Shown here in pieces: positions 4,338 through 58,409 of a DNA stretch of 64,000 bases. Location: positions 1-64,000 of IMG/VR virus record IMGVR_UViG_3300042889_001503; one strand, 5' to 3'. Each line of letters begins with the position of its first letter. The stretch's first letter is position 1. The notes under the pieces are model-generated. The model was not told the DNA's origin and made no database searches. It was given only the letters and a program-made list of their open reading frames with translations. The translations under genes were made by a program, and so were the position numbers.

Positions 4338-4367
4338 AAAAAAAGAGGACTATTTGTCCTCTTTTTT
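4338..4367. terminator. bidirectional terminator between convergent genes
   Basis: A run-GAGGAC-TATTT-GTCCTC-T run. Confidence 0.85.
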
Positions 4368-43790: not shown

Positions 43791-44540
43791 TTATTTAACC
43801 ATAGTTTGGACTAACTCAAAATACATATTTTTATATTTCTTCATTGACCCTCTAATTTCTTTAGTAGAAAGGTTGGTCATTTCCCTCAATGAGAGTAATA
43901 TTATATTCTTGTTGAATTTATTATTGTCGTTACCCACAAAAATATTTTCATAATTATCGAATAAATCGTATAATGCTTGTCCGAGTTTTATTTCATTCTC
44001 ACTTAGATTTTCATTTTTAACAAACAAATCTAATTTGATTAAAAAATGATGAATAATCCTTTCAGAATCTAAATTATCATTTTCAATGTAATATGCGAAC
44101 CCTTCATCGTTTTCTAAACTAGTTGAAATATCTTCGTAAGAAATTTTTCTATTAGTTTCTTTTTGGTCCTTAATAATTTGACCCATAAGATAATTTTTAC
44201 ATATGGTTCCAAAATAAGAGTAAGCCTTCTTTTCTTTAGAAGGCTTAAACTTATCTATTTTTGTTATTAAGAATGAGTGAGTATCTGTATGGATTTCATT
44301 AAAATCCATGTCTTTTCTATATAATTTGTATCTTCTTATAATCGAAGATATCATCTTATCTAAAGGTTTTAATAAAAACTCATTATAAATTTTATTTCTC
44401 TCGTGATGACATTCGGTTTCTAAAAATCGAACAACTGCCAGTTCTTCTCGAACATCAAAATAATTTAATTGGGTTGGTTTTCTACCTTTCTTCTTTAACT
44501 CAACGCTGGTGTCTCCTGTCAAATTAACTGATTCAGTCAT
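43791..44540 (-). CDS. sigma-factor-like protein (T4 gp55-like late sigma)
   Basis: Region-2-like KIDKFKPSKEKKAYSYFGTICKNYL. Confidence 0.6.
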   Translation of the reverse strand: MTESVNLTGDTSVELKKKGRKPTQLNYFDVREELAVVRFLETECHHERNKIYNEFLLKPLDKMISSIIRRYKLYRKDMDFNEIHTDTHSFLITKIDKFKPSKEKKAYSYFGTICKNYLMGQIIKDQKETNRKISYEDISTSLENDEGFAYYIENDNLDSERIIHHFLIKLDLFVKNENLSENEIKLGQALYDLFDNYENIFVGNDNNKFNKNIILLSLREMTNLSTKEIRGSMKKYKNMYFELVQTMVK

Positions 44541-45352
44541 TACGATTCTTGAGATTCGTATTTTATGGCTCTGTCATTAATAAAGAAAAACTCTTTTTTT
44601 GCTGACTCTACCCAAAATTTAACCTCGTCCGGGGAAATGATATCGTCACCATTTTTGTAATTCCAAAAAATAGAACCTTCACGTAAGTTCATATGTTTGT
44701 AACCAATTTTAGGAATTGTCATAATTCTTATTGAGTTGTATGTCATTCTTAAAAAGAATTCGTACCCAAAGGTTAATTTAAACGATGGTTTTAACAATCC
44801 ATAATCAATGAATGATTCTTTTTTAATTACTATCCCTGATAGTTGGAAATTTTGATAATCCATTAACGTTTCATTTGTTAAGATTCCCATTTCAGGTGTA
44901 AAATTTGCTGCGAATGTTGCCTCATTAGTGAAACCCGCAAAATTTGTGTTTTGGTCTACGTCAACAACTATTGGTAAAAATGCCGATACCTCAGGATATA
45001 TTTCAGAATATTTAAGAACGTTCTTAAACCAAATTGAAGAATATTCATCATCAAATTCAAACAATGAAACCCACGTTGATTTTGCACTTCTAACACCATA
45101 GTTAATTTGTGCCGAGTAATTTGGTTCTTTAGTCCACTCAACTTTAATTACCGGTAAATCACCAAAGTCAAAATCGTTTAAGTATTCAACTAAAGATGTT
45201 TCGTTAGTATGAACAATAACAAGTTCTTTTATTTCTGTTTTTTGTATTCTTAACGAATCGATAGCTTTTTTAAAGTATTCGTCAAAATCTCGTGCTTTAG
45301 ACGATTTAATCGGTAAGATAACCGATACATCAAATGTTTTAATTTCTTCCAT
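44540..45352 (-). CDS. glycosyltransferase, GT2/GT-A fold
   Basis: VSVILPI, NYGV, FEFDDEY. Confidence 0.75.
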   Translation of the reverse strand: MEEIKTFDVSVILPIKSSKARDFDEYFKKAIDSLRIQKTEIKELVIVHTNETSLVEYLNDFDFGDLPVIKVEWTKEPNYSAQINYGVRSAKSTWVSLFEFDDEYSSIWFKNVLKYSEIYPEVSAFLPIVVDVDQNTNFAGFTNEATFAANFTPEMGILTNETLMDYQNFQLSGIVIKKESFIDYGLLKPSFKLTFGYEFFLRMTYNSIRIMTIPKIGYKHMNLREGSIFWNYKNGDDIISPDEVKFWVESAKKEFFFINDRAIKYESQES

Positions 45353-46695: not shown

Positions 46696-47291
46696 TATAT
46701 TATTTTTGTTAATTCAAATTCTAATTCTTTAATTGTTGTTATAGAATTGTCTAATTTGATATGTTTATTGTATTCCGTTTGATATTGTATGATAATTTTA
46801 TCATCCGGATGTTCTAATAATAAGGCGGGATTAGCCGTAAGTAAAACATCAATTTCGTCCCACATTGAATTTATTGTCATATTACTATAGAATTTTACTT
46901 TTTCTATCTGACAACCAAATTTTGATAAGAAGAATAACGATGATGGTTTTGACCTACCCATTTCATCAGACACAATTAATATGTCGTGATTATCTCTTAA
47001 ATTTACGTATATCTCATTTAAATCATTGAAGGTTGAATATTCAGTTGATTGAGAGTGTCCAAAAATTTCCATAGGAAACTCCTCATATAAAAATGAATAT
47101 AATTCTTCGTCCGTTTGGAACTTAAAATGATTTCTAAGATTTAAACTATCTACCGGTAGGGATATCTCATATTTAAAAGATTCTTCGTCTTCCAACCCCT
47201 CCGTCTTATCTATCATATATTTTTGATAGGTTTGTTCTATTTTATCTATTGTATTTCTTAATACTCCGTTAATCTCAATTGCTATTCTCAT
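46695..47291 (-). CDS. HAD-like 5'(3')-nucleotidase homolog with degenerate motif I
   Basis: MRIAIEINGVLRN in place of DxDGVL; C-terminal EYNK. Confidence 0.5.
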   Translation of the reverse strand: MRIAIEINGVLRNTIDKIEQTYQKYMIDKTEGLEDEESFKYEISLPVDSLNLRNHFKFQTDEELYSFLYEEFPMEIFGHSQSTEYSTFNDLNEIYVNLRDNHDILIVSDEMGRSKPSSLFFLSKFGCQIEKVKFYSNMTINSMWDEIDVLLTANPALLLEHPDDKIIIQYQTEYNKHIKLDNSITTIKELEFELTKII

Positions 47292-48036
47292 CCGGTTCGT
47301 TATCGTATTTACGTAATATCTTACTAATTAATGGGTTTCGTACAATATCGTTTTTATCTTTAAATTCAAACGTTGACACATAGTCATCATCTCTAAACTT
47401 TTCGATTGCGTCCCATAAACCACTGTGGGTTTTATTTTTATATTTGTCCGATTGTTCCACATCACCTGATATGAAGAATTTACTGTTAAACCCAATTCTT
47501 GTTAAAAGAAGTTTCATTTGACTTGGCGAGGCATTCTGACCTTCTTCAAATATTAGAATAGAATTATCAATATTCATACCTCTCATAAACGCTAATGCAA
47601 ATACTTCAATAACTTCAATCTCTTTAAGTTTTTCACGAGATTCTTTTCCAATAATTTTATTTAATAAATAATATGATGGAAAAATATATGGGTCTAATTT
47701 TTCTTCTACGTTACCGGGTAGTGAACCTAATTTTTCTTCGGCTTCAACCGCCGGTCTAACAATGATAATTTTCTCATAAGGAGTTTTTGGGTCTGATAAT
47801 AAATCAATTGCAGCTTTCATTGTTATGTAACTTTTACCAACGCCCGCTGGTCCGGAACAAACAGTAATTTCACTTTCAATTAGAGTATCGTAATACTTTT
47901 TTTGATTTACTGTTAAAAACTTTTCTTTAGTTTTTCTCCTGATGATTTGACCAATTAAATCTTTTTTACTTACCGGTTTACCGGTGACTTCCGGAGTCGG
48001 AGTTGTTGTTGGTTTTCTTTTTCTAGCTTCAGCCAT
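47275..48036 (-). CDS. phoH: PhoH-family ATPase
   Basis: GPAGVGKS, RPAVE, LGSLPG, AFMRG, EGQN, GDVEQSD, DIVRNPLI. Confidence 0.92.
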   Translation of the reverse strand: MAEARKRKPTTTPTPEVTGKPVSKKDLIGQIIRRKTKEKFLTVNQKKYYDTLIESEITVCSGPAGVGKSYITMKAAIDLLSDPKTPYEKIIIVRPAVEAEEKLGSLPGNVEEKLDPYIFPSYYLLNKIIGKESREKLKEIEVIEVFALAFMRGMNIDNSILIFEEGQNASPSQMKLLLTRIGFNSKFFISGDVEQSDKYKNKTHSGLWDAIEKFRDDDYVSTFEFKDKNDIVRNPLISKILRKYDNEPDENSN

Positions 48037-48043
48037 TTTTTAA

Positions 48044-49033
48044 TTATTGTTGTTTATAATATGTTAACCAATGTTCAATCATTTCGTCTAACATAGTTTC
48101 AAAGGTATAGTCGTGAGTCCATCCCGTTGCTTTTACTAATTTTGATGGGTCACCTTTTAAATTATGTAATTCTTCCGGTCTTAAAAACTTCTCATCTTGT
48201 TTCACATATAATTCCCAATCTAAATCTAATTTTCCAAAAACATACTCACATAGGTCTTGTACTGAATGTGATATCCCTGTTGCACATACAAAATCATCAG
48301 GTTTATCCAATTGAAGAATCTCCCACATTACTTTAACATAATCTTTAGCGTGTCCCCAATCTCGAGTAGCATCTAAGTTACCTAGTTTAAGTTCATTCGA
48401 TAATCCAAATTTAATTTTAACGGCCTCTTTACAGACTTTATTAGTTACAAAGTTAGTTCCTCTTCTTGGTGATTCGTGGTTGAATAATATTCCGTTTGAT
48501 ATGAACATACCATAAGAATTTCTATAGTTACGACAAATATTGTAACTAAAAACTTTGGCACATCCGTAAGGTGATACAGGGTTCAATGGTGTAGTTTCTC
48601 TTTGATATCCATCGGTATCAATTGAATTACCAAACATTTCTGATGATGACGCTTGATAAATTTTAATAGATGGGTCTAATAATTTAACCGACTCTAAAAC
48701 ATTTAAAGTTCCTATTCCAGTAACATTTGCGGTGTATAATGGTTGGTCAAATGATATTCTTACGTGTGACTGAGCGGCTAAATTATATATCTCAATTGGT
48801 TTAACCTCACTAATAACTCGTACTAATGATGATAAGTCAGTTAAATCAGCGTAATGTAATTTAACTTTATCATATACTTTATCCAATCTTGATGTTTGAT
48901 TTTCTGCTACTGAATTTCTTTTTAAAGTTCCGTGAACTTCATATCCTTTTTCTATTAAGAATTCTGCAAGATAAGAACCATCTTGACCATTAATCCCTGT
49001 AATTAAAGCAATTTTATTTTCTTGTGTTTTCAT
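48044..49033 (-). CDS. gmd: GDP-mannose 4,6-dehydratase
   Basis: ALITGINGQDGSYLAE, NLAAQSHV, YQASSSEMFG, SPYGCAK, NHESPRRG, RDWGHAKDYV. Confidence 0.95.
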   Translation of the reverse strand: MKTQENKIALITGINGQDGSYLAEFLIEKGYEVHGTLKRNSVAENQTSRLDKVYDKVKLHYADLTDLSSLVRVISEVKPIEIYNLAAQSHVRISFDQPLYTANVTGIGTLNVLESVKLLDPSIKIYQASSSEMFGNSIDTDGYQRETTPLNPVSPYGCAKVFSYNICRNYRNSYGMFISNGILFNHESPRRGTNFVTNKVCKEAVKIKFGLSNELKLGNLDATRDWGHAKDYVKVMWEILQLDKPDDFVCATGISHSVQDLCEYVFGKLDLDWELYVKQDEKFLRPEELHNLKGDPSKLVKATGWTHDYTFETMLDEMIEHWLTYYKQQ

Positions 49034-49916
49034 AATTTTCTATAAACCAATTTATTGTTTCTTTTAATCCCTGTTCAATTGGGGTAAATTCAAAATTAGG
49101 TAAATACGATTTTAATTTTGAATTATCCGATGGTTTTCTAAATTGACCATCAGGTTTTGTTTTGTCAAATATTACTTTCCCTTTAAAGTTAAACTCATTA
49201 ACTAATAAATCAACCAAATCTTTAATACTAATTTCATTTGAGTTACTGAATATAATAGGTTCTGATTCATTATAATTGTCTAAGGCCCATTCAGATAATT
49301 TTGCGATATCTTTAGAATATATAAATTCCCTTAATGGTGTTCCACTACCCCAAACAACAAAATCAGCGTTATCTCTTTGAGCGTTATACATTTTATGTAA
49401 TAACATAGGGATTACGTGACCGGTGTCTAATGAAAAATTATCATTTGGTCCGTAAATGTTTGTTGGGATTACTGACACATATTCTAACCCATATTGTTCC
49501 CTATAAGCTCTTATTTGAATATCAGCCATTCTTTTTGCGTATGCGTATGGGTAATTTGAAAAGTGAGGGGCTCCTAAGTGAATTTTTTTCTCAGTTATTG
49601 GGTATTCAATATTGTCCGGAAATACACAAGTTGATAAAAATGATACTAATTTTTTAACATTATTTTTTCTGGCCGATTCAATAACGTTAGTGTTAATCAT
49701 TATGTTATCGTAAAAAAACTCTCCTTTATAATTCATATTGGCACTAAGACCACCTACTTTACCGGCACAATGAATAACGTGAGTTGGTTTATGGTATTCA
49801 AACATTTTATCGGTTTCTTCAATATTTCTCAAATCATACTCTTTACCAATTTTTACATCAGAAGTAATGGAAGAACCAACTAAACCATTACCACCGGTTA
49901 CTAATAATTTTTTCAT
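49014..49916 (-). CDS. fcl: GDP-4-keto-6-deoxymannose epimerase/reductase (GDP-L-fucose synthase / ColC-like)
   Basis: GGNGLVG, AGKVGG, LSTCVFP, YAYAKR, PTNIYGPNDNF, WGSGTPLREF. Confidence 0.9.
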   Translation of the reverse strand: MKKLLVTGGNGLVGSSITSDVKIGKEYDLRNIEETDKMFEYHKPTHVIHCAGKVGGLSANMNYKGEFFYDNIMINTNVIESARKNNVKKLVSFLSTCVFPDNIEYPITEKKIHLGAPHFSNYPYAYAKRMADIQIRAYREQYGLEYVSVIPTNIYGPNDNFSLDTGHVIPMLLHKMYNAQRDNADFVVWGSGTPLREFIYSKDIAKLSEWALDNYNESEPIIFSNSNEISIKDLVDLLVNEFNFKGKVIFDKTKPDGQFRKPSDNSKLKSYLPNFEFTPIEQGLKETINWFIENYENTRK

Positions 49917-51064
49917 ATATTTTCGTTAACAATTTTAATTACTTTAGTTATTTCTTCTTCAGTCATTTGGTGATTGTTTGGTAAGTATAAACCATATTCG
50001 TGTACTAACTTTGAATTAGGTAATTCTTGTTTCCCATATCTTTCATACCAAAATGGGTGTTCGTTTATTGACCCACAAATTAATGGTCGACATTCGATAT
50101 CATTATTTTGTAATTCAGTTATCAATCTGTCAAGATTTTTAGTTATTATAGGATAAGAAAAATTTGACACATAGGAATTACTTGTTGGTTTAACCTCCCA
50201 AAAATCATTTTTGATACCTTCTTTATATCTTATGTAATTCTTATATCTAGATTCAACAATATGGTCTAATTTATCCATTTGTTGAATTCCGATAAACGCT
50301 TGTAAGTCAGTTGCTCTTAAATTAAACCCCGGGTAATAAAAGGTGTATAATGATTTAAAATCATTAACCTTATATTTTTCGCGTAATTCTTTTTGTTTCG
50401 ATAAAGGTAAATCTCTGTCCCACCCGTGCGACCTAATGGATAATAAAATATGATACAATTCTTCATTATCTGTTGATACCATACCACCTTCAATTGTTGA
50501 CATATGATGTCCAAAATAAAATGAAAAGGTTGATAAATCTCCAAAAGTTCCTAAATGTTTATCACCGTATTTTGAACCAATAGATTCACAAGTATCCTCA
50601 ATTAATAAAATATCATTTTCTTCACATAGCTCAATGATTTCTTTCATATGATTAGGAAAACCTAATACGTGAACTAATATAATTGCGGAAGGGTTTTCTT
50701 CTTTAATTAACGTTTTTAAATGGTTAATATCTAAACCTAAATTATCCTTATCACAATCACACATAATAGGCGTTAATCCTAATTGTATTGCCGGTGTCAC
50801 AGTAGTTACCCAAGAAACTGCTGGAACAATAATTTTATTATTTTTTAACTTACCGGATAGTATTAACGAATAAATCGCCGCTAAATTGGCTGAAGACCCG
50901 GAATTCACAAATACCGAATACTTACACCCTAACCATTTAGACCATAAGTCCTCAAAAGTTGTTGTTAATTCTCCTTTAGTTAATCTTGGATTGGTTTTTA
51001 ACCATTCTATTAATTTGGTGATGTCATCAAAATCAATAGTGTCCTTTACTAGTTTAATACTCAT
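49913..51064 (-). CDS. colD: ColD-like GDP-4-keto-6-deoxymannose 3-dehydratase (DegT/DnrJ family)
   Basis: NSGSSAN, VPAVSW, EDTCES, SFYFGHHMSTIEGG (His in place of the Schiff-base Lys), RSHGW.R, PGFNLR. Confidence 0.75.
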   Translation of the reverse strand: MSIKLVKDTIDFDDITKLIEWLKTNPRLTKGELTTTFEDLWSKWLGCKYSVFVNSGSSANLAAIYSLILSGKLKNNKIIVPAVSWVTTVTPAIQLGLTPIMCDCDKDNLGLDINHLKTLIKEENPSAIILVHVLGFPNHMKEIIELCEENDILLIEDTCESIGSKYGDKHLGTFGDLSTFSFYFGHHMSTIEGGMVSTDNEELYHILLSIRSHGWDRDLPLSKQKELREKYKVNDFKSLYTFYYPGFNLRATDLQAFIGIQQMDKLDHIVESRYKNYIRYKEGIKNDFWEVKPTSNSYVSNFSYPIITKNLDRLITELQNNDIECRPLICGSINEHPFWYERYGKQELPNSKLVHEYGLYLPNNHQMTEEEITKVIKIVNENI

Positions 51065-51833
51065 ATATGTCTTTAATTGTTAAGTTGATTAGGTCGTTAT
51101 AATCTATTGTTTTTTCGCAACTATAATAACCACCTCTTTTTATTTTTAAGTTATTGGATTCGTCGTATTCTATGTAATCTATAATGTTTTTATTTAATTT
51201 TGTAAAGATGTCCTCAATAAACTTTTGAACATTGATTAATTCACCTAAACCAACAATACAATCTTTATCGGCTTTTAATGAAACATCAACAATGTTTTTA
51301 GGGTGGGTTAAATCTCTATTAAAATTAATATCACCAATAGATATTTTTTTATCGTTCAGTATTGAATCAAATATTTTACCAAAGAGAAACCCTTCTTTTC
51401 TATAAACAGAATTAAAGTTAAATGGGTAGATTATTATTACGTTAGGGTAAACATCTCTGTTATGATTAATATAGTTACAGAGAATTTCTTTTGATTTAAT
51501 ATATGGTGAGTAATTATAGTTATACTCATCACTTAGGGAGACACACCCGTCGTATTTATTCCACAATTCTGATGTTGAATAAATGATGACCTTATTTGAG
51601 ATGTCTTTAAACTTATTAATAACTTCTAACGTATAATCAAAATTAGTTTTTATAAAAAACTCATCAGATTCATTTAAAAAAGTTCGTTGTTCCGCAAATA
51701 ATAAAAAAACCTTGTCATACTTTTTAGAACAAAGTGTTGCAAAATCTATGTTTCGGGACGATATTTTTTCATAATCATTGGGGAAATAATGACTTAACTG
51801 AGATGTATTCCCAATTACTAAATTACTCAACAC
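51054..51833 (-). CDS. NAD-dependent epimerase/dehydratase-like protein
   Basis: LVIGNTSQL, YSTSE, YIKSK (YxxxK), RDLTH. Confidence 0.65.
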   Translation of the reverse strand: MLSNLVIGNTSQLSHYFPNDYEKISSRNIDFATLCSKKYDKVFLLFAEQRTFLNESDEFFIKTNFDYTLEVINKFKDISNKVIIYSTSELWNKYDGCVSLSDEYNYNYSPYIKSKEILCNYINHNRDVYPNVIIIYPFNFNSVYRKEGFLFGKIFDSILNDKKISIGDINFNRDLTHPKNIVDVSLKADKDCIVGLGELINVQKFIEDIFTKLNKNIIDYIEYDESNNLKIKRGGYYSCEKTIDYNDLINLTIKDIYEY

Positions 51834-52167
51834 CTTTATATAATTTTACCGAATCCTCAATTAATGATTTACCTTGACTTATTGAATTATCAACCATCCG
51901 ATTTATTGCCTCAACATATTTAGGTCGTTTACTTTTAAAACAGATGTCAATTTTTTTCTTTAACACAGCAATTTCAGAGTCGGTTTTAGCATCACTAATG
52001 GCGTCTTCTAAATACCACATTCTACAATGTAATATGGATAATTTTTCAATCACCTCACCTAAATTATCGGTTTCAATGATATCATCAGGTAATTCAACAT
52101 TTTTATTTTTAGTTAAAATTTCTAATGTTTTATTTTTAATTATTTCTTCAATTTTTTCACCTATCAT
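51823..52167 (-). CDS. hypothetical protein, DUF4254-like
   Basis: LGEVIEKLSIL..RMWYLED. Confidence 0.45.
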   Translation of the reverse strand: MIGEKIEEIIKNKTLEILTKNKNVELPDDIIETDNLGEVIEKLSILHCRMWYLEDAISDAKTDSEIAVLKKKIDICFKSKRPKYVEAINRMVDNSISQGKSLIEDSVKLYKGVE

Positions 52168-52169
52168 AA

Positions 52170-53039
52170 TTATTTAATTTTTAAATTTATTTCATTTTGT
52201 ATTGTTGTTATCATATTAGGATAATTTAAATTATTTGACCATAAATTTTTATTTTTACCATCATAATAAAATATACCTTCAGATTCATTAAATGTGAATG
52301 AAATGAATGTTTTTTTATCGTCATTAAAATTTTCTTTAGTATGTGTAAAACAAAATGGTCCGGAAGCCCTTCCTACAATAATATCACAATGATTTGAAAT
52401 TAGACTAATTTGTAATAAATCAGGTAATGATTCTGTTATTTGTGGATATGTTGTAATAACATTAGAATTATTTTCATATAATTGATTAGTACTTAAAAAT
52501 AAACAATTAGGGTTATTTTCAGACAAATTTTCAACAATAGGTGTGAAACTAAAATTATGTGATTGACTTGAATTTACATTACCGTCACAAACTAAAATAA
52601 TTAAATCATATTTTAGTTTTAATTCTTTTATTTTGTTTACAATATTATCATGCGATTTTAAATTAGTATTAATCACAGAGGGTAAATACTTATTAAAATC
52701 ATTATCTAATTCAATATTATAGAAATCACAAATATCGGTAACTAATTTAAAATGATTAATAAATGAACAACCAGGAATAGGTTGGTGTGATACATAAATC
52801 ATTTGTTTTTGTCCTATCCAAGTATTCACAATATTATTTTCTAAATTTGTGTTGTGAATATCATAATTTCCGGGGATACCCACAATTTCATTAACTTCAG
52901 GTAAATCTTCAAATAATGGTGATTGTAGATTATGATAGTATGTAATGTTATAATGGTTTTTTAAAATATTAATTAATATTCTTGAGTAAAATATATCACC
53001 ATTGTGGAAATGATTATATAATGTTATATTGTTTTTCAT
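52170..53039 (-). CDS. putative glycosyltransferase (GT-B-like)
   Basis: HNGD N-terminal motif; CDIIVGRASGP; start taken as MKNNITLY. Confidence 0.55.
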   Translation of the reverse strand: MKNNITLYNHFHNGDIFYSRILINILKNHYNITYYHNLQSPLFEDLPEVNEIVGIPGNYDIHNTNLENNIVNTWIGQKQMIYVSHQPIPGCSFINHFKLVTDICDFYNIELDNDFNKYLPSVINTNLKSHDNIVNKIKELKLKYDLIILVCDGNVNSSQSHNFSFTPIVENLSENNPNCLFLSTNQLYENNSNVITTYPQITESLPDLLQISLISNHCDIIVGRASGPFCFTHTKENFNDDKKTFISFTFNESEGIFYYDGKNKNLWSNNLNYPNMITTIQNEINLKIK

Positions 53040-53043
53040 ATTA

Positions 53044-53817
53044 TTAACTATAATGTATGTGTTTATCCATATATTTAAAATTTTCATTTAAATTATTTAA
53101 TAATGAAAAAGTTGATACGTTACTTCTACTTACTAATTTAAAATCAGTTAATGATAATAAAATAGAATCAACAATAACTTCTTCGGCTAATTTAGATTTA
53201 TTTGGTAGATTTGAAAAATGTAAACCAACATTAGAATCACCCCTTCTTGATTCAGTATAAATTAAAGTATCACCTAATTCTTTTTTAAAAAAATTCAAAG
53301 AATTATTATCATCAGTCATTAAATAAATTTTATCATAACTGTTATGTTTAAATTCTTCATTAATATTTGACAAAATAATTTCATCAGATAATAATGCTCC
53401 GTGAGTACTATGGTCTGTACCTCTTTTTTGAACACCTAAAGTTTTTAACCCTTTAAAATAATTTTTATCAATATTGTTAAAAAAAATATTATCCATTAAT
53501 TTTAAATCAATCAATGTTTGAGAGGGGGTTTTTAAATTTTTTAAAATAGTTAATTCATCAAGTCCATTTCCAATAGCTTCAGGGAAATAATACCCATAAG
53601 GGGTTAAATTAATAAATGTTGACGTAATTGGTTCAATATCATAAACTTGTTTAAAAAATTTATCATATAGATTTTCGTTAGATAAATCACTATACATATA
53701 ATTAAACCATTCAACATTAAATTTTTGATTATTATCGTTAAAATACATTATACCCGCTAATAATGTTAAAAAATCCGAAAAAAAACCTTCGTTTCGGTTT
53801 ATTATTAATTTATTCAT
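53044..53817 (-). CDS. NodZ/FUT-like GDP-sugar (fucosyl/colitosyl) transferase
   Basis: EGFFS, LGVQKRGTD, IYLMTDD, D..LLS.TD....SNVS. Confidence 0.7.
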   Translation of the reverse strand: MNKLIINRNEGFFSDFLTLLAGIMYFNDNNQKFNVEWFNYMYSDLSNENLYDKFFKQVYDIEPITSTFINLTPYGYYFPEAIGNGLDELTILKNLKTPSQTLIDLKLMDNIFFNNIDKNYFKGLKTLGVQKRGTDHSTHGALLSDEIILSNINEEFKHNSYDKIYLMTDDNNSLNFFKKELGDTLIYTESRRGDSNVGLHFSNLPNKSKLAEEVIVDSILLSLTDFKLVSRSNVSTFSLLNNLNENFKYMDKHIHYS

Positions 53818-53823
53818 ATTTTA

Positions 53824-54501
53824 TTATAAATTTTTATTTAATTCAAAATTTATTGATTTTCTTTTTAGATATAAATTTTTATCAATATAATCATTTTTAG
53901 AATTTTCTAAATGTATATTGTCTCGACCACCGAATCCAACATCAGGATGTTCATGTTTAATTATTAGTTCATTAAAATAAGTTTGTTTATTTAATAAGTT
54001 TGCAACATCCATAAATTCGTTATCCGCCCATAAAGATTTATATTCTGGATGATAAATGTAATTAAACCTCTCATAATATTTTTTACCTAAAATACATAAA
54101 GTATTCAATCTATTACCTTGATAACCATCATTAAACCATAAAACACCATCAGTATCCGGATATTTTTCTTTCATTTTTTTTCTAATGATTGTATCGTAAC
54201 CTTTAACTTTTGGTATCATATCATCAGATGCTAATAAGACAATATCCCAATCATTTTCGGTTTCCATATCTCTATTTATGGCTTCGATTTTTGATTTACT
54301 TTCACCATAAATGTATGATAAGTTTTTGTATTCTTTAAACATCTCAATAACACCCGGTTGATTCATAACTTTATCATCAGTGTCTAATGTTACTAAAAAT
54401 TTAATATTATCTAAATCATCACACATTGTGTAATACATTTTTAAAACATTAAAGAATTTAAATGTTCGTCCTCTAGTAGGAAACTTAATTAAAATTTTCA
54501 T
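53824..54501 (-). CDS. glycosyltransferase, GT-A fold
   Basis: KFPTRGR, LASDDM, WADNE, IKHEH. Confidence 0.7.
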   Translation of the reverse strand: MKILIKFPTRGRTFKFFNVLKMYYTMCDDLDNIKFLVTLDTDDKVMNQPGVIEMFKEYKNLSYIYGESKSKIEAINRDMETENDWDIVLLASDDMIPKVKGYDTIIRKKMKEKYPDTDGVLWFNDGYQGNRLNTLCILGKKYYERFNYIYHPEYKSLWADNEFMDVANLLNKQTYFNELIIKHEHPDVGFGGRDNIHLENSKNDYIDKNLYLKRKSINFELNKNL

Positions 54502-55882
54502 TCTTAAAATTTTTGTTCATTATTTTATTATACAACTCTTGTTGGTTGTTATTCGCCTCTGTTGATACGGTTCCGTCACTTTCGTGGTGAAAATATACAA
54601 AAAGAGGTTTTGGTATTCTTTTCCCCGAATATCCCTTCAATCCCATTCTAATCCATAAATCATAATCTTCCCATCCTTTCAATGTAACATCATACCCGTC
54701 ACAAACATCAAACGCTTCTTTATGAAACATTGAACAATTAACTATAAACGGACCTTCTCTTAATCTTTCTATAGACCATTCAGGTCTTTTTTCGATTCCT
54801 TGTATTTGACCTATATGATGTGTATCACAATAAACCGGACTAATGGTTTTATTGTTTTTTAAAATGTTAACACAGAATTGAATATAATCCGGATGAATAG
54901 TGTCATCACCATCTAATGGTAGTATAAAAATACCATTTGAATTTTTAACCCCATTATTTCTTGCTGAAGATGGTCCTTGATTTTCTTGATATATGATTTT
55001 AATATTTGGATGGTCTTTAATACTCTCTAATTTTAATTTAACGTAAGTATCGGTTGACCCGTCATCAACAATTACTATCTCTACATTTTTATAGGTAGAA
55101 TCAAATACTGATTGTAACGATTTTTCGAATTGTAACCCATAATTGTAAATCGGAATTATAACAGAAACTAACGGTAACTTTGGATTAATTTTATTTATCG
55201 GGTATTTTGATTCTAATTTAATAGGTAATTTTTCTTTGTATTTTTCTAAAAATAATAATCTATTCTGTTCCCACTGATTATTGGTCATACCAATAGAAAG
55301 ATGTGTTAACGGGACATTTGAAATTGTTCCAACTTTAACTCCGGATAAATGATTACTCATACAAAATGATGTATCATAAAAATGGAATCCGGTAAATGAT
55401 TCATCAAAATTAGTTTTTAAATTACTTTTTTTAACGGCAAAGAAAACACCATCAACAATAACGGAATCTATTATTTTTGACCCAAATGGTTTATTATATT
55501 CAGATAACCATTTTTTACCTTCGTGCTGATGATAAACTTGACCAATCATCTCACCCTGTATGTCCCACCATCTTCCGGAATTAGGGTAATATGATGTTCC
55601 AGCAACACCTAAAATACCGTATTCAGGTTTTTTGGTAAAATGTTCTAAAACTCGTTTACCCCAATATTCTTTTTCAAAAATGATATCATTATGACAAAAC
55701 ACAATAATATCATTAACTGATTCGTTTAATCCTTTGTTATAAACTTCAGTTAAACTAAATTGGTTATGGTTAACATACTCCAATATTTGAACATTTTTTA
55801 AACCAACAGTTTGTAACAAATGTTGTCTAAATTTGTTATTATATTGTTCGTCTTTATGTGTTGAATAAATTACTGTTATCAT
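54485..55882 (-). CDS. two-domain glycosyltransferase (GT2-like plus GT2)
   Basis: YNKG..FCHNDI..GVAG..VDGVF..FHFYD; second domain VSVIIPIYN, VDDGSTD, ARNNG, LDGDD, EDYDLW. Confidence 0.88.
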   Translation of the reverse strand: MITVIYSTHKDEQYNNKFRQHLLQTVGLKNVQILEYVNHNQFSLTEVYNKGLNESVNDIIVFCHNDIIFEKEYWGKRVLEHFTKKPEYGILGVAGTSYYPNSGRWWDIQGEMIGQVYHQHEGKKWLSEYNKPFGSKIIDSVIVDGVFFAVKKSNLKTNFDESFTGFHFYDTSFCMSNHLSGVKVGTISNVPLTHLSIGMTNNQWEQNRLLFLEKYKEKLPIKLESKYPINKINPKLPLVSVIIPIYNYGLQFEKSLQSVFDSTYKNVEIVIVDDGSTDTYVKLKLESIKDHPNIKIIYQENQGPSSARNNGVKNSNGIFILPLDGDDTIHPDYIQFCVNILKNNKTISPVYCDTHHIGQIQGIEKRPEWSIERLREGPFIVNCSMFHKEAFDVCDGYDVTLKGWEDYDLWIRMGLKGYSGKRIPKPLFVYFHHESDGTVSTEANNNQQELYNKIMNKNFKNENFN

Positions 55883-56484
55883 ACTAATCCTGTTGAACCA
55901 AATCCGTTTTCACCCCGTTCTTTTTTATTTATTTTCTCAACTTGATTTAATCCTACCCAAGCACCGTTTACAACGGGACAAAGAACCGCTTGTCCGAATT
56001 TCATACCTTTTGGTATTCTAACCTCAGTTGGGTTTGTATTAAAGATGATTCCTTTAACTTCTCCGGTGTAACCATTATCCACGGTTCCCGGTGAATTTAA
56101 AACCATAAGTCCTTGGTTGATTGCCAACCCACTTTTTGTTCTAACTTGTATCTCAAAACCGTCTTTAATGTCGAAACATAGTCCACTAGGAACTAACGCT
56201 CTACCAAACGGTGGGATAACAACATCCTCAACAGAATGTAAGTCAAACCCCGAATCACTATCGTAGTTATATTTTGGGTGAACAGCATCCGGGTGAAGTA
56301 TCTCATAAGGTAAATCTAATTTAGTTGCCCCCTCGGCAATATCTTTTTCAATTTGTTCTAAATCAATATCCATTTCTTTCAAAATGTCATCGTAATCCAC
56401 CTCACCTGTTTCGGATGAGAATGTCTCTTGTAAATTAAGTAATTTTTTTCTTAAATTTTCTAACTCTTCAAAATTGTCTAACAT
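55879..56484 (-). CDS. dut: dUTPase with acidic N-terminal extension
   Basis: SGFDL, RTKSGLA, NSPGTVDNGYTGE, RGENGFGSTG. Confidence 0.92.
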   Translation of the reverse strand: MLDNFEELENLRKKLLNLQETFSSETGEVDYDDILKEMDIDLEQIEKDIAEGATKLDLPYEILHPDAVHPKYNYDSDSGFDLHSVEDVVIPPFGRALVPSGLCFDIKDGFEIQVRTKSGLAINQGLMVLNSPGTVDNGYTGEVKGIIFNTNPTEVRIPKGMKFGQAVLCPVVNGAWVGLNQVEKINKKERGENGFGSTGLV

Positions 56485-57185
56485 TATTCTAATTCTTTTA
56501 ATTTTTTTATTACGTCAATTAGTACAAGTACGTCTCGTTCACAGTAAGCGGTGATTTCAGGTAACATATTTTTGTTCCAATATGCGTCGTGAACTTTATC
56601 TCCGGTAACATCACCTTCCTTTGGTGATGGAACATCCATACAAGTACACATTAAGTCTAACGAACCAATTGCCGTATATGCTCCGTATTGCCAAATTTCT
56701 TTGGTATCGATAGCTTTAATCTCCCACGGTTTTGTGTCGTAAGATGGTAAAAGTGTTGGAGGCATTAATCCGTTGATAATCATTCGTTTTGCCAACATAG
56801 GGATATCAAAATTCTTAAGATTGTGTCCACATAGATAAAAATCTAATTTACCACAACGATTAAGTAATGTTTGACATTCTTTTAATAGAACCTTTTCATC
56901 ATCACCTGAAAACGATTGTTTTTTAATATCACCATTGTCCATAACAAAGGCAACACTAACACAAACAATTTTTGCAAACTCAGGAACTAATGCGGCTCTT
57001 TTTTCAAAAACTTTATCGGCAGAAAATCCGGCATCTTCAGGAAATCGTTTTTGGAACCAATCAAAATATTTCTCAAATTGACTCGCAACATTAGGATTGT
57101 TAACTTTACACTCGGTATAGTTTTTACATCCACCAACAGTTTCTATATCAAGAAACAATATTTTGGTTAAAGGTATTTTTATCAT
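56484..57185 (-). CDS. 3'-5' exonuclease (PolB exo-like, DEDDy)
   Basis: FLDIETV, GHNLKNFDIP, YCERDV. Confidence 0.85.
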   Translation of the reverse strand: MIKIPLTKILFLDIETVGGCKNYTECKVNNPNVASQFEKYFDWFQKRFPEDAGFSADKVFEKRAALVPEFAKIVCVSVAFVMDNGDIKKQSFSGDDEKVLLKECQTLLNRCGKLDFYLCGHNLKNFDIPMLAKRMIINGLMPPTLLPSYDTKPWEIKAIDTKEIWQYGAYTAIGSLDLMCTCMDVPSPKEGDVTGDKVHDAYWNKNMLPEITAYCERDVLVLIDVIKKLKELE

Positions 57186-57188
57186 TTT

Positions 57189-58409
57189 TTATTTTATTAA
57201 AGATTTGTAAAATTCTGCTCTATTTTTTGTAACCACGTTAAGGTCGTATTTGTCTTTTACTGTATTATATAATCTTTCACCCAATACTTTAATCATTTCA
57301 GGGTTCTGAACTAATTTCTTAATTGCTTTAGACCAATCACTATGATTTCTACTTTCAGGGATTAAAATAGCGTTACCCTCTTCGTTAAATTCACCATTTT
57401 TCAAACAGTGAACTAAATCGATTGTGTATGGTCCAATTTCAGACGCGATTAAAGCTTTCTTATAAAACCCTGCCTCAATAACTTTTAATTGAGATTTCAT
57501 TCTGTTGAAGATGTGATTTTTAATCGGAGCCAAAGATATATCAAATTTTGAATAATTCATAGCGTAAGTTGTGACAGGTTTTGTCCAAACTCTAACATAA
57601 GGTAAAACATTTCCGGAATTATATTCACCTTCTTTAAATTGTTGTAAGAATTTTTTATAGTCATCATCAACTGTTTGATAATTGGTTGTAAAAATTTCCT
57701 CATAACGAGCCCATACAGTTTCGTGTGGTTTAATTTCTCGTTGTTTTTCTTCACCTGTTTGAGGATTTATTTCAGTTACAGTTCCTCTTGTATCAAAACC
57801 ACAAATCACATATTGTAATTTATCGTTAATGTCACTATTTTTTTGAACAAACCCCCCAAGTAATTCTAAATCGTGTAAGTGAGATGAGCCACCTAACCAC
57901 CCAACTCTAATTTTATCAGAAGGAGGTGTTGGTTGATTAAACTGTAATTCTTTTGGGTTAATGGCGTTTGGAAATACAATAACGTTTTTGTTTAATTTTT
58001 TGATTTCCTCAGCAAATATATCAGTAGTGGTGGTTACATAACTTGCCGCTCTCAGATTATTTTTAATTTTCTCATCAATTTTGTGTTTAACAATAATACT
58101 ATGTATTGGATGCTCAACCGTTGGTAACCAATAATCATCTAAATCGACAATAACGATAATACCCATTGACTTTAACCATTGGATTAATTGAGGGGCGATA
58201 TTATAATCTTGTCCAATTGTTCTGTGAGCATGAATTATCTGATATTTTTTCCAATATTCAATATTATTTATTTGAGGTTCGTAGTCAATATCTACGTGGA
58301 AGTCATCCGGATATAAGTTTTGTAAGAATACGTGAGGGTCAACAGAGCGAAATTTACCAACACCTGTTTTGTCACTTGGTAGAACTAATACATTAATTTT
58401 TTCTTTCAT
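57189..58409 (-). CDS. glycosyltransferase, GT-B (GT4-like)
   Basis: DLDDYW, GWLGGSSH..DL, DISLAP, FNRMKSQLKVIEAG, IAS. Confidence 0.8.
   Translation of the reverse strand: MKEKINVLVLPSDKTGVGKFRSVDPHVFLQNLYPDDFHVDIDYEPQINNIEYWKKYQIIHAHRTIGQDYNIAPQLIQWLKSMGIIVIVDLDDYWLPTVEHPIHSIIVKHKIDEKIKNNLRAASYVTTTTDIFAEEIKKLNKNVIVFPNAINPKELQFNQPTPPSDKIRVGWLGGSSHLHDLELLGGFVQKNSDINDKLQYVICGFDTRGTVTEINPQTGEEKQREIKPHETVWARYEEIFTTNYQTVDDDYKKFLQQFKEGEYNSGNVLPYVRVWTKPVTTYAMNYSKFDISLAPIKNHIFNRMKSQLKVIEAGFYKKALIASEIGPYTIDLVHCLKNGEFNEEGNAILIPESRNHSDWSKAIKKLVQNPEMIKVLGERLYNTVKDKYDLNVVTKNRAEFYKSLIK

What the first reader, a model, noticed from the sequence alone, without database searches (positions are those of the whole stretch)
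48044..53817. Apparently complete GDP-L-colitose route in a phage (gmd + colD-like + colC/fcl-like) next to a NodZ-like transferase
The DegT-family gene has SFYFGHHMSTIEGG, with His at the position where aminotransferases have the PLP-binding Lys. This is the established signature of 3-dehydratases (ColD/E1), and the flanking motifs (VPAVSW, EDxCES, R.HGW.R.LP, PG(F/Y)N.R) match ColD. With Gmd and an Fcl/ColC-type reductase this would give a 3,6-dideoxyhexose best known from O-antigens. Routine annotation would probably miscall it as an aminotransferase plus fucose synthase.
Basis: partly seen in the sequence, partly recalled or inferred. Interest (0 to 1): 0.65.

Follow-up and report, generated by a model that had tools for sequence, protein, structure and literature searches.

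The report
Phage 3,6-dideoxy-sugar (colitose-type) gene cassette
A roughly 300-kb lake-water phage carries intact, conserved genes for turning GDP-mannose into fucose-like and 3-deoxy-fucose-like (colitose-type) sugars and for attaching them to an unknown target; no paper I could search describes this sugar chemistry in a virus.

Summary
Window 48044-53817 (minus strand) carries overlapping ORFs for Gmd, an Fcl-family epimerase/reductase, and a DegT-family protein with His where aminotransferases have the PLP lysine. There is also a FUT8/NodZ-fold transferase.

- **ColD-type enzyme:** its best solved match is E. coli ColD (E 2.6e-66). It lacks the E1 iron-sulfur cysteines and sits in the His-type clade of the tree. 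It falls in a sister clade to characterised ColD (36% identity), not inside it.
- **The reductase is not ColC-type:** it lies outside the ColC clade and lacks ColC signature residues. It is much closer to eukaryote-type GDP-fucose synthases.
51054-51833 encodes a compact GMD/RMD-fold reductase-like protein ('SDR259') whose ORF overlaps the ColD-like start.
- **Cassette variants in related phages:** this slot holds either SDR259 or a divergent Fcl paralogue, never both. One complete relative has Gmd, ColD-like and SDR259 but no Fcl.

Best reading: Gmd plus the ColD-like enzyme make GDP-4-keto-3,6-dideoxymannose. Fcl probably finishes it to GDP-L-colitose and also makes GDP-L-fucose. SDR259 may make a different isomer. 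A GDP-3,6-dideoxyhexose is likely; colitose specifically is about even odds. Interest is moderate.

The parts
48044..49033 (-). Gmd, GDP-mannose 4,6-dehydratase (329 aa)
   Evidence: Pfam GDP_Man_Dehyd 390 bits over the full length. TIGR01472 scores 399 bits, just under the 415 cut-off. The Ser-x-Glu, YxxxK and FNHESPRRG motifs are visible in the translation. It overlaps the Fcl ORF by 20 nt. dN/dS 0.04-0.09.
49014..49916 (-). Fcl/GFS-type GDP-4-keto-6-deoxymannose epimerase/reductase (300 aa); candidate last enzyme for both GDP-L-fucose and GDP-L-colitose
   Evidence: Best PDB matches are GDP-L-fucose synthases: human 4e5y E 8.7e-96, E. coli 1bws E 6e-55. It is 29% identical to E. coli O55 ColC and 34% to E. 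coli Fcl. It falls in a third Fcl clade, outside the ColC clade, and lacks ColC signature residues. The Ser-x-Cys, YxxxK and His motifs are kept.
49913..51064 (-). ColD-like PMP-dependent sugar 3-dehydratase (383 aa); catalytic His186 at codon 50507-50509
   Evidence: Pfam DegT 250.7 bits. Best PDB match is ColD 2gms at E 2.6e-66, against E1 at 3e-43 and PerA at 4e-31. His sits in the Lys column. Three of the four E1 iron-sulfur cysteines are absent. The His-type clade has 100% support; the protein lies in the sister clade to canonical ColD. It overlaps Fcl by 4 nt and SDR259 by 11 nt.
51054..51833 (-). SDR259: compact GMD/RMD-fold short-chain dehydrogenase-like protein (259 aa, GTG start); candidate 4-ketoreductase
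   Evidence: Weak Pfam GDP_Man_Dehyd hit, 38 bits. The family profile hits only GMDs in the PDB, at E 2e-7. AF2 model pLDDT 92. Foldseek top matches are GMD (TM 0.77-0.80) and RMD 2pk3/6x3b. Thr87, Glu89, Tyr111, Lys115 and Arg27 are invariant in 30 homologues. It lies directly upstream of, and overlaps, the ColD-like gene in 29 related loci, and never occurs with the Fcl paralogue.
51823..52167 (-). DUF4254-like small protein (114 aa), conserved at the head of the cassette
   Evidence: Pfam DUF4254 20.9 bits, below the cut-off. Homologues at 65-83% identity sit upstream of the cassette in relatives of several cassette types. Function unknown.
52170..53087 (-). Probable glycosyltransferase with a GT9-like fold (305 aa), in the variable block
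   Evidence: No Pfam hit. The Atlas structure search gives TM 0.69 to a GT9 cluster and feature scores of 0.96-0.98 to viral clusters. Relatives are 37-48% identical and not always present.
53044..53817 (-). FUT8/NodZ-fold (GT23-like) fucosyltransferase-superfamily protein (257 aa)
   Evidence: Pfam NodZ 22.8 bits, below the cut-off. Atlas feature hits to NodZ, FUT8_N_cat and O-FucT clusters at 0.95-0.98. AF2 model pLDDT 94. Foldseek top matches are FUT8 (E 5e-9, TM 0.67-0.69), NodZ, AtFUT1 and POFUT2. Arg132 and Asp135 are invariant in an H-x-R-x-x-D-like motif.
53824..54501 (-). Unknown 225-aa protein in the variable block
   Evidence: No Pfam or NCBIfam hit. Homologues at 61-70% identity sit next to the double GT2 gene in some relatives.
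54485..55882 (-). Two-domain GT2 glycosyltransferase (465 aa), the conserved left border of the variable block
   Evidence: Pfam Glyco_tranf_2_5 (residues 7-215) and Glycos_transf_2 (residues 240-347). Conserved in relatives.

Best explanation
The block is a phage-borne GDP-mannose deoxy-sugar cassette with attached glycosyltransferases.

1. **Gmd** converts host GDP-mannose to GDP-4-keto-6-deoxy-D-mannose.
2. **The ColD-like enzyme** uses PMP, with His186 as the acid/base, to remove the C3 hydroxyl. This gives GDP-4-keto-3,6-dideoxy-D-mannose. The cofactor is recharged by transamination with glutamate, and no iron-sulfur partner is needed.
3. **The Fcl-type epimerase/reductase** then most likely epimerises C5 and reduces C4. 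From the ColD product this gives GDP-L-colitose (3-deoxy-L-fucose). Directly from the Gmd product it gives GDP-L-fucose.
4. **SDR259**, the compact GMD/RMD-like protein coupled to the ColD-like gene, is probably a second terminal 4-ketoreductase. It would give an alternative, possibly D-series, product.
5. **The FUT8/NodZ-fold, GT9-like and GT2 transferases** place these sugars on an unidentified acceptor: host envelope glycan or phage virion protein.

Shown here: gene identities, the His substitution, absence of the iron-sulfur motif, gene coupling, conservation and cassette variants. Inferred: substrates, products, stereochemistry and acceptor.
For: - **ColD-type identity:** best PDB match is ColD, well ahead of E1 and aminotransferases. 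His is in the Lys column in 85 of 85 clade members. The C-x57-C-x-C-x7-C motif found in E1-like proteins is replaced by Arg217, Leu219 and Leu227, as in E. coli ColD. The His-type clade is separated from Lys-type enzymes with 100% support. The mechanistic framework comes from the review PMC8987622.
- **GDP-mannose branch:** ORFs overlap in the order SDR259, ColD-like, Fcl, Gmd. In relatives the ColD-like and Gmd ORFs overlap by 4 nt.
- **An Fcl-type enzyme is enough as partner:** 15 related phage loci have only Fcl paralogue, ColD-like and Gmd, often with a GT11 gene just upstream. The complete V2-type genome G002 has no other Fcl-type gene and no SDR259. GT11 is the Pfam family of alpha-1,2-fucosyltransferases, and the gene annotated 'alpha-1,2-fucosyltransferase' in the E. 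coli O55 colitose locus presumably belongs to it. Cellular ColD homologues also sit next to Fcl-type enzymes.
- **SDR259 role:** GMD/RMD fold, conserved Thr/Glu/Tyr/Lys, strict coupling to the ColD-like gene, and mutual exclusion with the Fcl paralogue. The complete 268.7-kb relative G001 has Gmd, ColD-like and SDR259 but no Fcl-type gene.
- **Selection:** dN/dS 0.02-0.08.
- **Transferases:** fucosyltransferase fold.
- **Possible expression:** lake metatranscriptome contigs match parts of all four genes at 95-100% identity. This is a weak hint only.
Against: - The ColD-like protein is only 36% identical to E. coli ColD and lies in a sister clade with no characterised member. Cellular members of that clade have Gmd within 6 kb in only 5 of 28 loci.
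- The Fcl-type enzyme is outside the ColC clade and lacks ColC-invariant residues. Whether GFS-type enzymes accept the 3-deoxy substrate was not found in the papers I could read.
- SDR259 keeps only the first glycine of the GxxGxxG nucleotide-binding motif.
- Distant SDR259 relatives sit with Gmd and no ColD-like gene, so SDR259 may act on the Gmd product (a rhamnose-type sugar) rather than on the ColD product.
- No biochemical data exist for any of these proteins.
- The RNA-library contigs may be DNA carry-over.
Confidence: 0.6

Rival explanations
1. The dideoxy branch is finished by SDR259 alone, and the Fcl-type enzyme makes only GDP-L-fucose. If SDR259 is a plain RMD-like 4-ketoreductase with no C5 epimerisation, the product is a GDP-3,6-dideoxy-D-hexose (arabino = tyvelose-type, or lyxo), not colitose.
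For: - SDR259 overlaps the ColD-like start in all 29 loci that have it, and is never found with the Fcl paralogue that otherwise fills that slot.
- The complete genome G001 has SDR259, ColD-like and Gmd but no Fcl-type gene.
- SDR259 has a GMD/RMD fold and a conserved catalytic set.
- The window Fcl is a short-branch, GFS-like sequence, whereas the paralogue in SDR259-less phages sits on a long stem.
- A viral GMD-fold enzyme is linked to GDP-D-rhamnose synthesis: PBCV-1, Tonetti 2003, known to me only from its title as cited in PMC9614988.
Against: - Distant SDR259 relatives pair with Gmd without any ColD-like gene, so the family does not need a 3-deoxy substrate.
- The nucleotide-binding glycine motif is degenerate.
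- Nothing prevents the Fcl-type enzyme from also using the ColD product.
- Stereochemistry cannot be read from sequence.
- G001 has one other RmlD-like SDR elsewhere in its genome.
Confidence: 0.25
2. The DegT-family protein is not a GDP-sugar 3-dehydratase. It would then act on another nucleotide sugar (CDP-, dTDP- or GDP-heptose series), or work as a slow aminotransferase giving a 4-amino-4,6-dideoxy sugar.
For: - Best NCBIfam model is RfbH/E1 (233 bits, well below its cut-off of 423), and JGI names the homologues as CDP-type dehydrases.
- No member of its clade has been characterised.
- Most cellular members of that clade lack a nearby Gmd.
- SpnQ, another His-type enzyme, shows aminotransferase activity under some conditions (PMC8987622).
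Against: - The PDB score to ColD (228 bits) is far above E1 (152 bits).
- The E1/SpnQ iron-sulfur cysteines are absent, and no E3-type reductase, cytidylyltransferase or CDP/dTDP-glucose dehydratase is in the block.
- The gene overlaps Gmd and Fcl-family genes in every phage locus examined.
- There is no lysine to hold PLP as an internal aldimine.
Confidence: 0.1
3. The cassette makes only GDP-L-fucose. The ColD-like and SDR259 genes would be inactive passengers.
For: Gmd, Fcl and fucosyltransferase genes are already known in cyanophages (PMC9602691).
Against: - The ColD-like and SDR259 genes are under strong purifying selection (dN/dS 0.02-0.08), with all catalytic residues kept.
- Some relatives keep the ColD-like gene but have no Fcl.
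Confidence: 0.03

Closest known systems
GDP-L-colitose pathway of Gram-negative O-antigens (Gmd, ColD/WbdK, ColC/WbdJ; E. coli O55 and O111, Yersinia pseudotuberculosis VI, Vibrio cholerae O139)
   Same: Gmd is followed by a His-type, iron-sulfur-free, PMP-dependent DegT-family 3-dehydratase and an Fcl-family SDR, with fucosyltransferase-family transferases nearby. The ColD motifs and catalytic His are conserved.
   Different: The ColD-like protein lies in a sister clade (36% identity). The SDR is GFS-type, not ColC-type. An extra GMD/RMD-like SDR is coupled to the ColD-like gene. The block has no manB, manC, wzx or wzy. The genes sit in a jumbo phage rather than an O-antigen locus.
CDP-3,6-dideoxyhexose pathway (E1/RfbH/DdhC with E3 reductase; abequose, paratose, tyvelose, ascarylose)
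   Same: His replaces the PLP lysine, and C3 is deoxygenated on a 4-keto-6-deoxy sugar nucleotide (PMC8987622). RfbH is the top NCBIfam model.
   Different: The window protein lacks three of the four [2Fe-2S] cysteines and scores lower to E1 than to ColD. No E3 or CDP-glucose genes are present.
GDP-fucose/fucosyltransferase ('LPS') gene clusters of T4-like cyanophages (P-SSM2, S-SSM7, S-SCSM1) and ACG-2014f/S-CAM7
   Same: These are also phage-encoded Gmd and Fcl genes with GT11, NodZ or O-FucT-type transferases (PMC9602691). ACG-2014f has the same Gmd, Fcl, ColD-like trio with the His. S-CAM7 annotates a 3-dehydrase.
   Different: The cyanophage ColD-like proteins are only about 37% identical and belong to another subclade. 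Those clusters have no SDR259. The 3-dehydratase step is not discussed in the papers I could search.
GDP-D-rhamnose route: RMD (GDP-4-keto-6-deoxy-D-mannose reductase) and the PBCV-1 GDP-fucose/GDP-rhamnose enzymes
   Same: SDR259 has the GMD/RMD fold and the Thr/Glu/Tyr/Lys set. Distant relatives sit beside Gmd without a ColD-like gene.
   Different: SDR259 is 259 aa against about 300-370. It shares only about 14-18% identity with solved GMD and RMD structures, has a degenerate glycine motif, and in this phage lineage is coupled to a 3-dehydratase.

Membership tests
ColD (GDP-4-keto-6-deoxy-D-mannose 3-dehydratase) | DegT/aspartate-aminotransferase-type fold | tested here: met
   Pfam PF01041 scores 250.7 bits over residues 15-379.
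ColD (GDP-4-keto-6-deoxy-D-mannose 3-dehydratase) | Histidine in place of the PLP-binding lysine | tested here: met
   His186 aligns with ColD His188 and with PerA Lys. The column is His in 85 of 85 clade rows and Lys in 4 of 4 outgroup rows.
ColD (GDP-4-keto-6-deoxy-D-mannose 3-dehydratase) | No [2Fe-2S] cysteine motif (which distinguishes it from E1 and SpnQ) | tested here: met
   E1-like proteins show C-x57-C-x-C-x7-C. The window protein has Arg217, Leu219 and Leu227 at the last three positions, as E. coli ColD does.
ColD (GDP-4-keto-6-deoxy-D-mannose 3-dehydratase) | Groups with characterised ColD in a phylogeny | tested here: not met
   It falls in the sister clade (31 rows) of the canonical ColD clade (48 rows, 98% support), at 36% identity to E. 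coli ColD. It is still nearer ColD than E1-like or Lys-type enzymes. The tree is a quick search with SH-aLRT support only.
ColD (GDP-4-keto-6-deoxy-D-mannose 3-dehydratase) | Genomic linkage to gmd and an Fcl/ColC-family gene | tested here: met
   The ORFs overlap in the window. ColD-like and Gmd overlap by 4 nt in related phage loci.
ColD (GDP-4-keto-6-deoxy-D-mannose 3-dehydratase) | Catalyses C3 deoxygenation of GDP-4-keto-6-deoxymannose with PMP and glutamate | not testable with these tools
   This needs an enzyme assay.
ColC (GDP-L-colitose synthase) | Member of the ColC clade of the Fcl family | tested here: not met
   The window SDR lies in a separate 16-row clade (96%). The ColC clade (36 rows, 99%) excludes it. 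Identity to E. coli O55 ColC is 29%.
ColC (GDP-L-colitose synthase) | ColC-invariant residues (Asn at E. coli Fcl position 18; Tyr-Tyr at 256-257) | tested here: not met
   The window has Ser, Leu and Val at these columns. The phage paralogue also has Fcl-like residues there. These signature positions were derived here by clade comparison, not taken from experiments.
GDP-L-fucose synthase (Fcl/GFS/GMER) | Sequence membership and catalytic Ser/Tyr/Lys plus Cys and His | tested here: met
   The PDB's best matches are all GDP-fucose synthases, E 8.7e-96. The Ser-x-Cys, YxxxK and His motifs align. NCBIfam NF047922 scores 247 bits, below its strict cut-off of 500.
GDP-mannose 4,6-dehydratase (Gmd) | Full-length match to the family model and catalytic motifs | tested here: met
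   PF16363 scores 390 bits over positions 1-332. TIGR01472 scores 399 bits, slightly under its cut-off of 415.
GMD/RMD-type extended SDR (for SDR259) | Fold and catalytic Thr/Tyr/Lys (plus Glu) | tested here: met
   The pLDDT-92 model matches GMD at TM 0.77-0.80 and RMD at 0.70-0.77. Thr87, Glu89, Tyr111 and Lys115 are invariant.
GMD/RMD-type extended SDR (for SDR259) | GxxGxxG dinucleotide-binding motif | tested here: not met
   Only the first Gly (Gly8) is conserved; the motif reads G-N-T-S-Q-L-S. Cofactor binding is therefore unproven.
GT23 / fucosyltransferase superfamily (NodZ, FUT8) | Family model match | tested here: inconclusive
   Pfam NodZ scores 22.8 bits against a cut-off of 28.3, N-terminus only. 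About half of the homologues carry a precomputed NodZ hit.
GT23 / fucosyltransferase superfamily (NodZ, FUT8) | GT-B fucosyltransferase fold with a conserved Arg in an H-x-R-x-x-D-type motif | tested here: met
   Foldseek's top matches are FUT8, NodZ, AtFUT1 and POFUT2. Arg132, Thr134 and Asp135 are invariant. Equating this motif with the GDP-fucose-binding motif rests on my own knowledge.

The most novel reading that the evidence does not exclude
Lake jumbo phages carry a modular switch at the slot just upstream of the ColD-like gene. That slot holds either a divergent Fcl paralogue, giving L-colitose, or SDR259. SDR259 is known so far only from viral and metagenomic contigs and is a miniaturised GMD/RMD-derived reductase. 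It would convert the ColD product into a GDP-linked 3,6-dideoxy-D-hexose (tyvelose-type). That sugar nucleotide has not been described to my knowledge: known tyvelose is CDP-activated. On this reading the window phage makes a new GDP-3,6-dideoxyhexose in addition to GDP-L-fucose, and phage lineages vary their glycan by swapping this one gene.
Probability: 0.2. Interest if true: 0.7.

Novelty: new variant of a known kind. Interest (0 to 1): 0.5.

Why it matters
3,6-Dideoxyhexoses are classic bacterial O-antigen determinants. I found no paper describing a virus-encoded route to one.

- **Scale:** the cassette sits in an abundant lineage of lake jumbo phages. There are thousands of homologues at 77-97% identity, and complete genomes of 269-321 kb.
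- **Context:** it lies beside a low-GC, rapidly changing block of glycosyltransferases, much like an O-antigen locus carried by a virus.
- **Consequence if active:** phages can decorate either the host surface or their own particles with rare deoxy sugars. That bears on superinfection exclusion, receptor masking and grazing.
- **Enzymology:** the cassette offers uncharacterised ColD-clade and GMD-derived enzymes for making rare sugar nucleotides.
- **Annotation:** His-type DegT proteins, including the reference ColD, are still named aminotransferases by a major pipeline.

Tried and rejected
- **Nucleotide search of the phage collection:** no match for the region. The window's own record is probably withheld.
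- **Primary ColD and E1 structure papers:** reading them by DOI or PMC id failed because they are not held. ColD GDP-binding residues were therefore not checked one by one.
- **E1 reference:** the NCBIfam RfbH search in the control genomes gave none over the cut-off. I used E1-like proteins from fetched loci, recognised by their cysteine motif, but did not scan them against RfbH.
- **First guess at the E. coli O55 O-antigen position:** wrong, then corrected.
- **SDR259 as an RmlD homologue:** considered because of its N-terminal motif. Dropped because profile and fold searches point to GMD/RMD.
- **Divergent SDR259 hidden in the Fcl-paralogue loci:** the profile search found none.
- **ColC-like signature residues in either phage Fcl type:** none found.
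- **The second SDR in complete relative G001:** unrelated to SDR259 (hhalign probability 0.5%) and sits beside transketolase-like genes.
- **Metatranscriptome contigs:** they cover only short pieces and cannot prove transcription.
- **Failed script:** one script call returned no answer and was rerun.

Full report
**Setting**

The window is bases 70628-134627 of a 159,912-bp IMG/VR viral contig that CheckV rates 53% complete.
- Complete relatives with terminal repeats are 308-321 kb, and a further one that CheckV rates complete is 269 kb, so this is a jumbo phage.
- Its major capsid protein is nearest to those of Flavobacterium phage immuto, Microcystis phage Mel-JY01 and uncultured huge phages.
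- The stretch occurs at 98-100% of sampled words in 18 lake-water metagenome runs. The host is unknown.
- G+C is about 30% and drops to 21.7% at 52-54 kb.

**Anatomy**

All genes from about 37.5 to 61 kb are on the minus strand. In transcription order the relevant ones are:

| Coordinates | Gene |
|---|---|
| 57189-58409 | glycosyltransferase |
| 56484-57185 | exonuclease |
| 55879-56484 | dUTPase |
| 54485-55882 | two-domain GT2 |
| 53824-54501 | unknown, 225 aa |
| 53044-53817 | FUT8/NodZ-fold protein |
| 52170-53087 | GT9-like-fold protein |
| 51823-52167 | DUF4254-like |
| 51054-51833 | SDR259 |
| 49913-51064 | ColD-like |
| 49014-49916 | Fcl-type SDR |
| 48044-49033 | Gmd |
| 47275-48036 | PhoH |
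| 44540-45352 | further on, a weak GT2 |

Sources. SDR259 overlaps the ColD-like gene by 11 nt, ColD-like overlaps Fcl by 4 nt, and Fcl overlaps Gmd by 20 nt.

**The DegT-family protein**

- *Solved structures.* E. coli ColD is the top match (2gms, 228 bits, E 2.6e-66). E1 follows at 152 bits, and perosamine synthase and other aminotransferases score at or below about 120 bits. The PDB's own H188N and H188K mutant chains identify the catalytic His, and the window's His186 aligns with it.
- *Reference locus.* I fetched the E. coli O55:H7 O-antigen locus for ColD and ColC and the O157 locus for PerA and Fcl. Identity to E. coli ColD is 36%.
- *The His column.* It is His in the window protein, two relatives, cyanophage ACG-2014f and ColD, and Lys in PerA. 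Across 89 sequences it is His in 85 of 85 His-clade rows and Lys in 4 of 4 outgroup rows.
- *Iron-sulfur motif.* Two E1-like proteins from fetched loci carry C-x57-C-x-C-x7-C. The window protein and E. coli ColD keep only the first Cys. The review PMC8987622 states that E1 and SpnQ hold a [2Fe-2S] cluster that ColD lacks, and that His replaces the catalytic Lys in all three.
- *Phylogeny.* In a quick maximum-likelihood tree the His-type enzymes form one group (100% SH-aLRT), with the E1-like pair basal. A canonical ColD clade (48 rows, 98%) holds E. coli ColD. The window protein lies in its sister clade (31 rows). There it sits in a 100%-supported subclade with proteins from Pelagibacteraceae and Prochlorococcus single-cell genomes and from Saprospiraceae, Acidobacteria and Poribacteria assemblies.

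The enzyme is therefore ColD-like in mechanism-defining features, but it is not a member of the characterised ColD clade.

**Context in cellular genomes**

A His-containing peptide pattern found more than 600 stretches in species-representative genomes.

| Clade | Gmd within 6 kb | Fcl/ColC homologue nearby | Type of that homologue |
|---|---|---|---|
| Canonical ColD | 39 of 47 | 42 of 47 | 33 ColC-type, 9 Fcl-type |
| Sister clade (cellular members) | 5 of 28 | 16 of 28 | 15 Fcl-type, 1 ColC-type |

Sources. Fcl-type partners for ColD homologues are thus not unusual. Linkage of the sister clade to Gmd is weak outside phages.

**The Fcl-type SDR**

- It matches GDP-L-fucose synthases: human 4e5y at 324 bits, E. 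coli at about 190 bits. It matches E. coli O55 ColC at only 150 bits and 29% identity.
- In the family tree the ColC clade (36 rows, 99%) excludes it. It lies in a third clade (16 rows, 96%) with Fcl-like genes that neighbour sister-clade ColD homologues.
- Three columns are invariant in the ColC clade (Asn; Tyr-Tyr) and differ in bacterial Fcl. At these columns the window has Fcl-like or other residues.
- The catalytic Ser-x-Cys, YxxxK and His motifs are shared by all three groups, so they do not discriminate.

Chemically, colitose is 3-deoxy-L-fucose. An Fcl mechanism acting on the 3-deoxy intermediate would give colitose. This is an inference, not a tested result.

**The overlooked gene, SDR259**

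- Pfam gives only a weak GDP_Man_Dehyd match.
- The word search found 974 homologues at E ≤ 0.001; the 120 best listed are 228-274 aa long.
- A 30-sequence alignment shows invariant Thr87, Glu89, Tyr111, Lys115 and Arg27, but only the first Gly of the dinucleotide motif.
- The profile hits only GMDs in the PDB, at E 2e-7. GMD-typical motifs are visible in the alignment.
- An AlphaFold model (pLDDT 92) matches GMD structures best (TM 0.77-0.80) and RMD reductases at 0.70-0.77.

**Comparative genomics of the cassette**

I fetched 44 viral loci with the ColD-like protein as query and 55 with the SDR259 profile. Three cassette types appear:

| Type | Gene content | Loci |
|---|---|---|
| V1 (window type) | SDR259, ColD-like, then Fcl and Gmd in either order | 24 |
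| V2 | 308-aa Fcl paralogue (43-45% identical to the window Fcl, on a long stem in the tree), ColD-like, Gmd; no SDR259; often a GT11 gene just upstream | 15 |
| V3 | SDR259, ColD-like, Gmd; no Fcl within 9 kb (L112, L126) or within 4 kb (L151) | 3 distinct contigs: L112 (= L162), L126 (= L152), L151 |

- SDR259 and the paralogue never co-occur.
- A complete V3 genome (G001, 268,739 bp) has no Fcl-type gene at all. Its only other SDR is unrelated to SDR259 and lies beside transketolase-like genes 150 kb away.
- A complete V2 genome has only Gmd and the paralogue.
- Distant SDR259 relatives (37-47% identity) sometimes sit with Gmd, with or without Fcl, and no ColD-like gene within 4 kb.
- All four window genes have dN/dS of 0.02-0.08 against close relatives.

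**Reading of these patterns**

V2 shows that an Fcl-family enzyme alone can partner this ColD-like enzyme. That supports a colitose-type route in the lineage. V3 shows that SDR259 alone can also be the only phage-encoded candidate for the last step. The window (V1) has both, so it may make GDP-L-fucose, GDP-L-colitose and an SDR259 product. I cannot tell from sequence which enzyme takes the ColD product in this phage, or the C4/C5 stereochemistry of the SDR259 product.

**Transferases**

- The 257-aa ORF at 53044-53817 has a sub-threshold NodZ hit and Atlas feature hits to NodZ, FUT8 and O-FucT clusters. Its pLDDT-94 model has FUT8, NodZ, AtFUT1 and POFUT2 as best structural matches.
- The 305-aa ORF has a GT9-like fold.
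- Between the conserved double GT2 gene and the DUF4254-like gene, relatives carry different sets of small transferases (GT11, GT10, GT25) and methyltransferases. The block behaves as a variable island.
- The family scans of the ten ORFs between 47275 and 55882 found no flippase, polymerase or initiating phosphotransferase. The acceptor stays open.
- No ManC-type gene is in the 160-kb record, so GDP-mannose presumably comes from the host or from the missing half of the genome.

**Prior knowledge**

- Gmd, Fcl and fucosyltransferase genes in cyanophages are published (PMC9602691).
- ACG-2014f has the same Gmd, Fcl, ColD-like trio, annotated 'nucleotide-sugar epimerase' twice and 'aminotransferase'.
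- S-CAM7 and S-H68 GenBank records, and JGI's automatic names, already say 'CDP-...-3-dehydrase'.
- I found no paper on a phage or giant-virus route to colitose or any other 3,6-dideoxyhexose.

**Expression**

Contigs from three lake metatranscriptome libraries match short parts of Gmd, Fcl, ColD-like and SDR259 at 95-100% identity. DNA carry-over is not excluded, so this is only a hint.

**Verdict**

- A ColD-type 3-deoxygenation step on the GDP-mannose branch is likely, at about 0.8.
- Colitose as a product of this particular phage is about even odds.
- The claim that the SDR is ColC-like is not supported.
- The coupled GMD/RMD-like SDR259 and its exchange with an Fcl paralogue are the most novel aspects.

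Noticed in passing
window 52000-54000: G+C falls to 21.7%, against about 30% around it. The dip lies exactly over the variable glycosyltransferase genes, as in horizontally exchanged O-antigen-like islands.
   Followed up: partly
window 49014-49916 (-): The phage Fcl is much closer to eukaryote-type GDP-fucose synthases in the PDB (human 4e5y, 324 bits; Naegleria 6aqy) than to E. coli Fcl (about 190 bits). The origin of this clade was not traced.
   Followed up: partly
L103:10149-12027, L131:10170-12053 versus window 48044-49916: Gmd and Fcl are in the opposite order in otherwise syntenic relatives: ColD-Gmd-Fcl-PhoH against ColD-Fcl-Gmd-PhoH.
   Followed up: no
L005:5701-6867 (E. coli O55:H7 CB9615): RefSeq/PGAP names the structurally characterised reference ColD 'DegT/DnrJ/EryC1/StrS family aminotransferase' and ColC 'GDP-L-fucose synthase family protein'.
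   Followed up: yes
L174, L176-L181, L183, L184, L187, L188: Distant SDR259 relatives (37-47% identity) sit next to Gmd, with or without Fcl, and no ColD-like gene within 4 kb. One contig is labelled as a giant-virus MAG and one is 428 kb.
   Followed up: partly
L189:133-2912 (G001, complete 268.7-kb relative): A split transketolase-like pair (202 and 156 aa) is followed by an RmlD-like 259-aa SDR and an unknown 313-aa ORF. This may be another sugar-modifying module.
   Followed up: no
window 51823-52167 (-): A small DUF4254-like protein is conserved at the head of the cassette in relatives of several cassette types (65-83% identity). Its function is unknown.
   Followed up: no
L103:12031-13023; L126:11120-12175; L122:12552-13538: Relatives add further sugar-nucleotide enzymes to the same cassette. 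These are a full-length 331-aa GMD-family SDR, a UDP-glucose/GDP-mannose dehydrogenase-like protein and a UDP-GlcNAc 2-epimerase.
   Followed up: no
window 4350-6395 (-): A 681-aa FtsH-like ATP-dependent protease gene is present (phrog_4871, E 1e-240).
   Followed up: no
window 22000-24000: There is a strong local composition anomaly (GC skew -0.48, GC 0.38) inside the 1040-aa ORF 21884-25006.
   Followed up: no
L011, L018, L019 (Pelagibacteraceae and Prochlorococcus single-cell genomes): The nearest cellular homologues of the phage ColD-like protein (45-52% identity) come from marine single-cell assemblies. In L019 a ColC-type gene lies directly upstream. I did not check whether these contigs are cellular or from infecting phages.
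   Followed up: no
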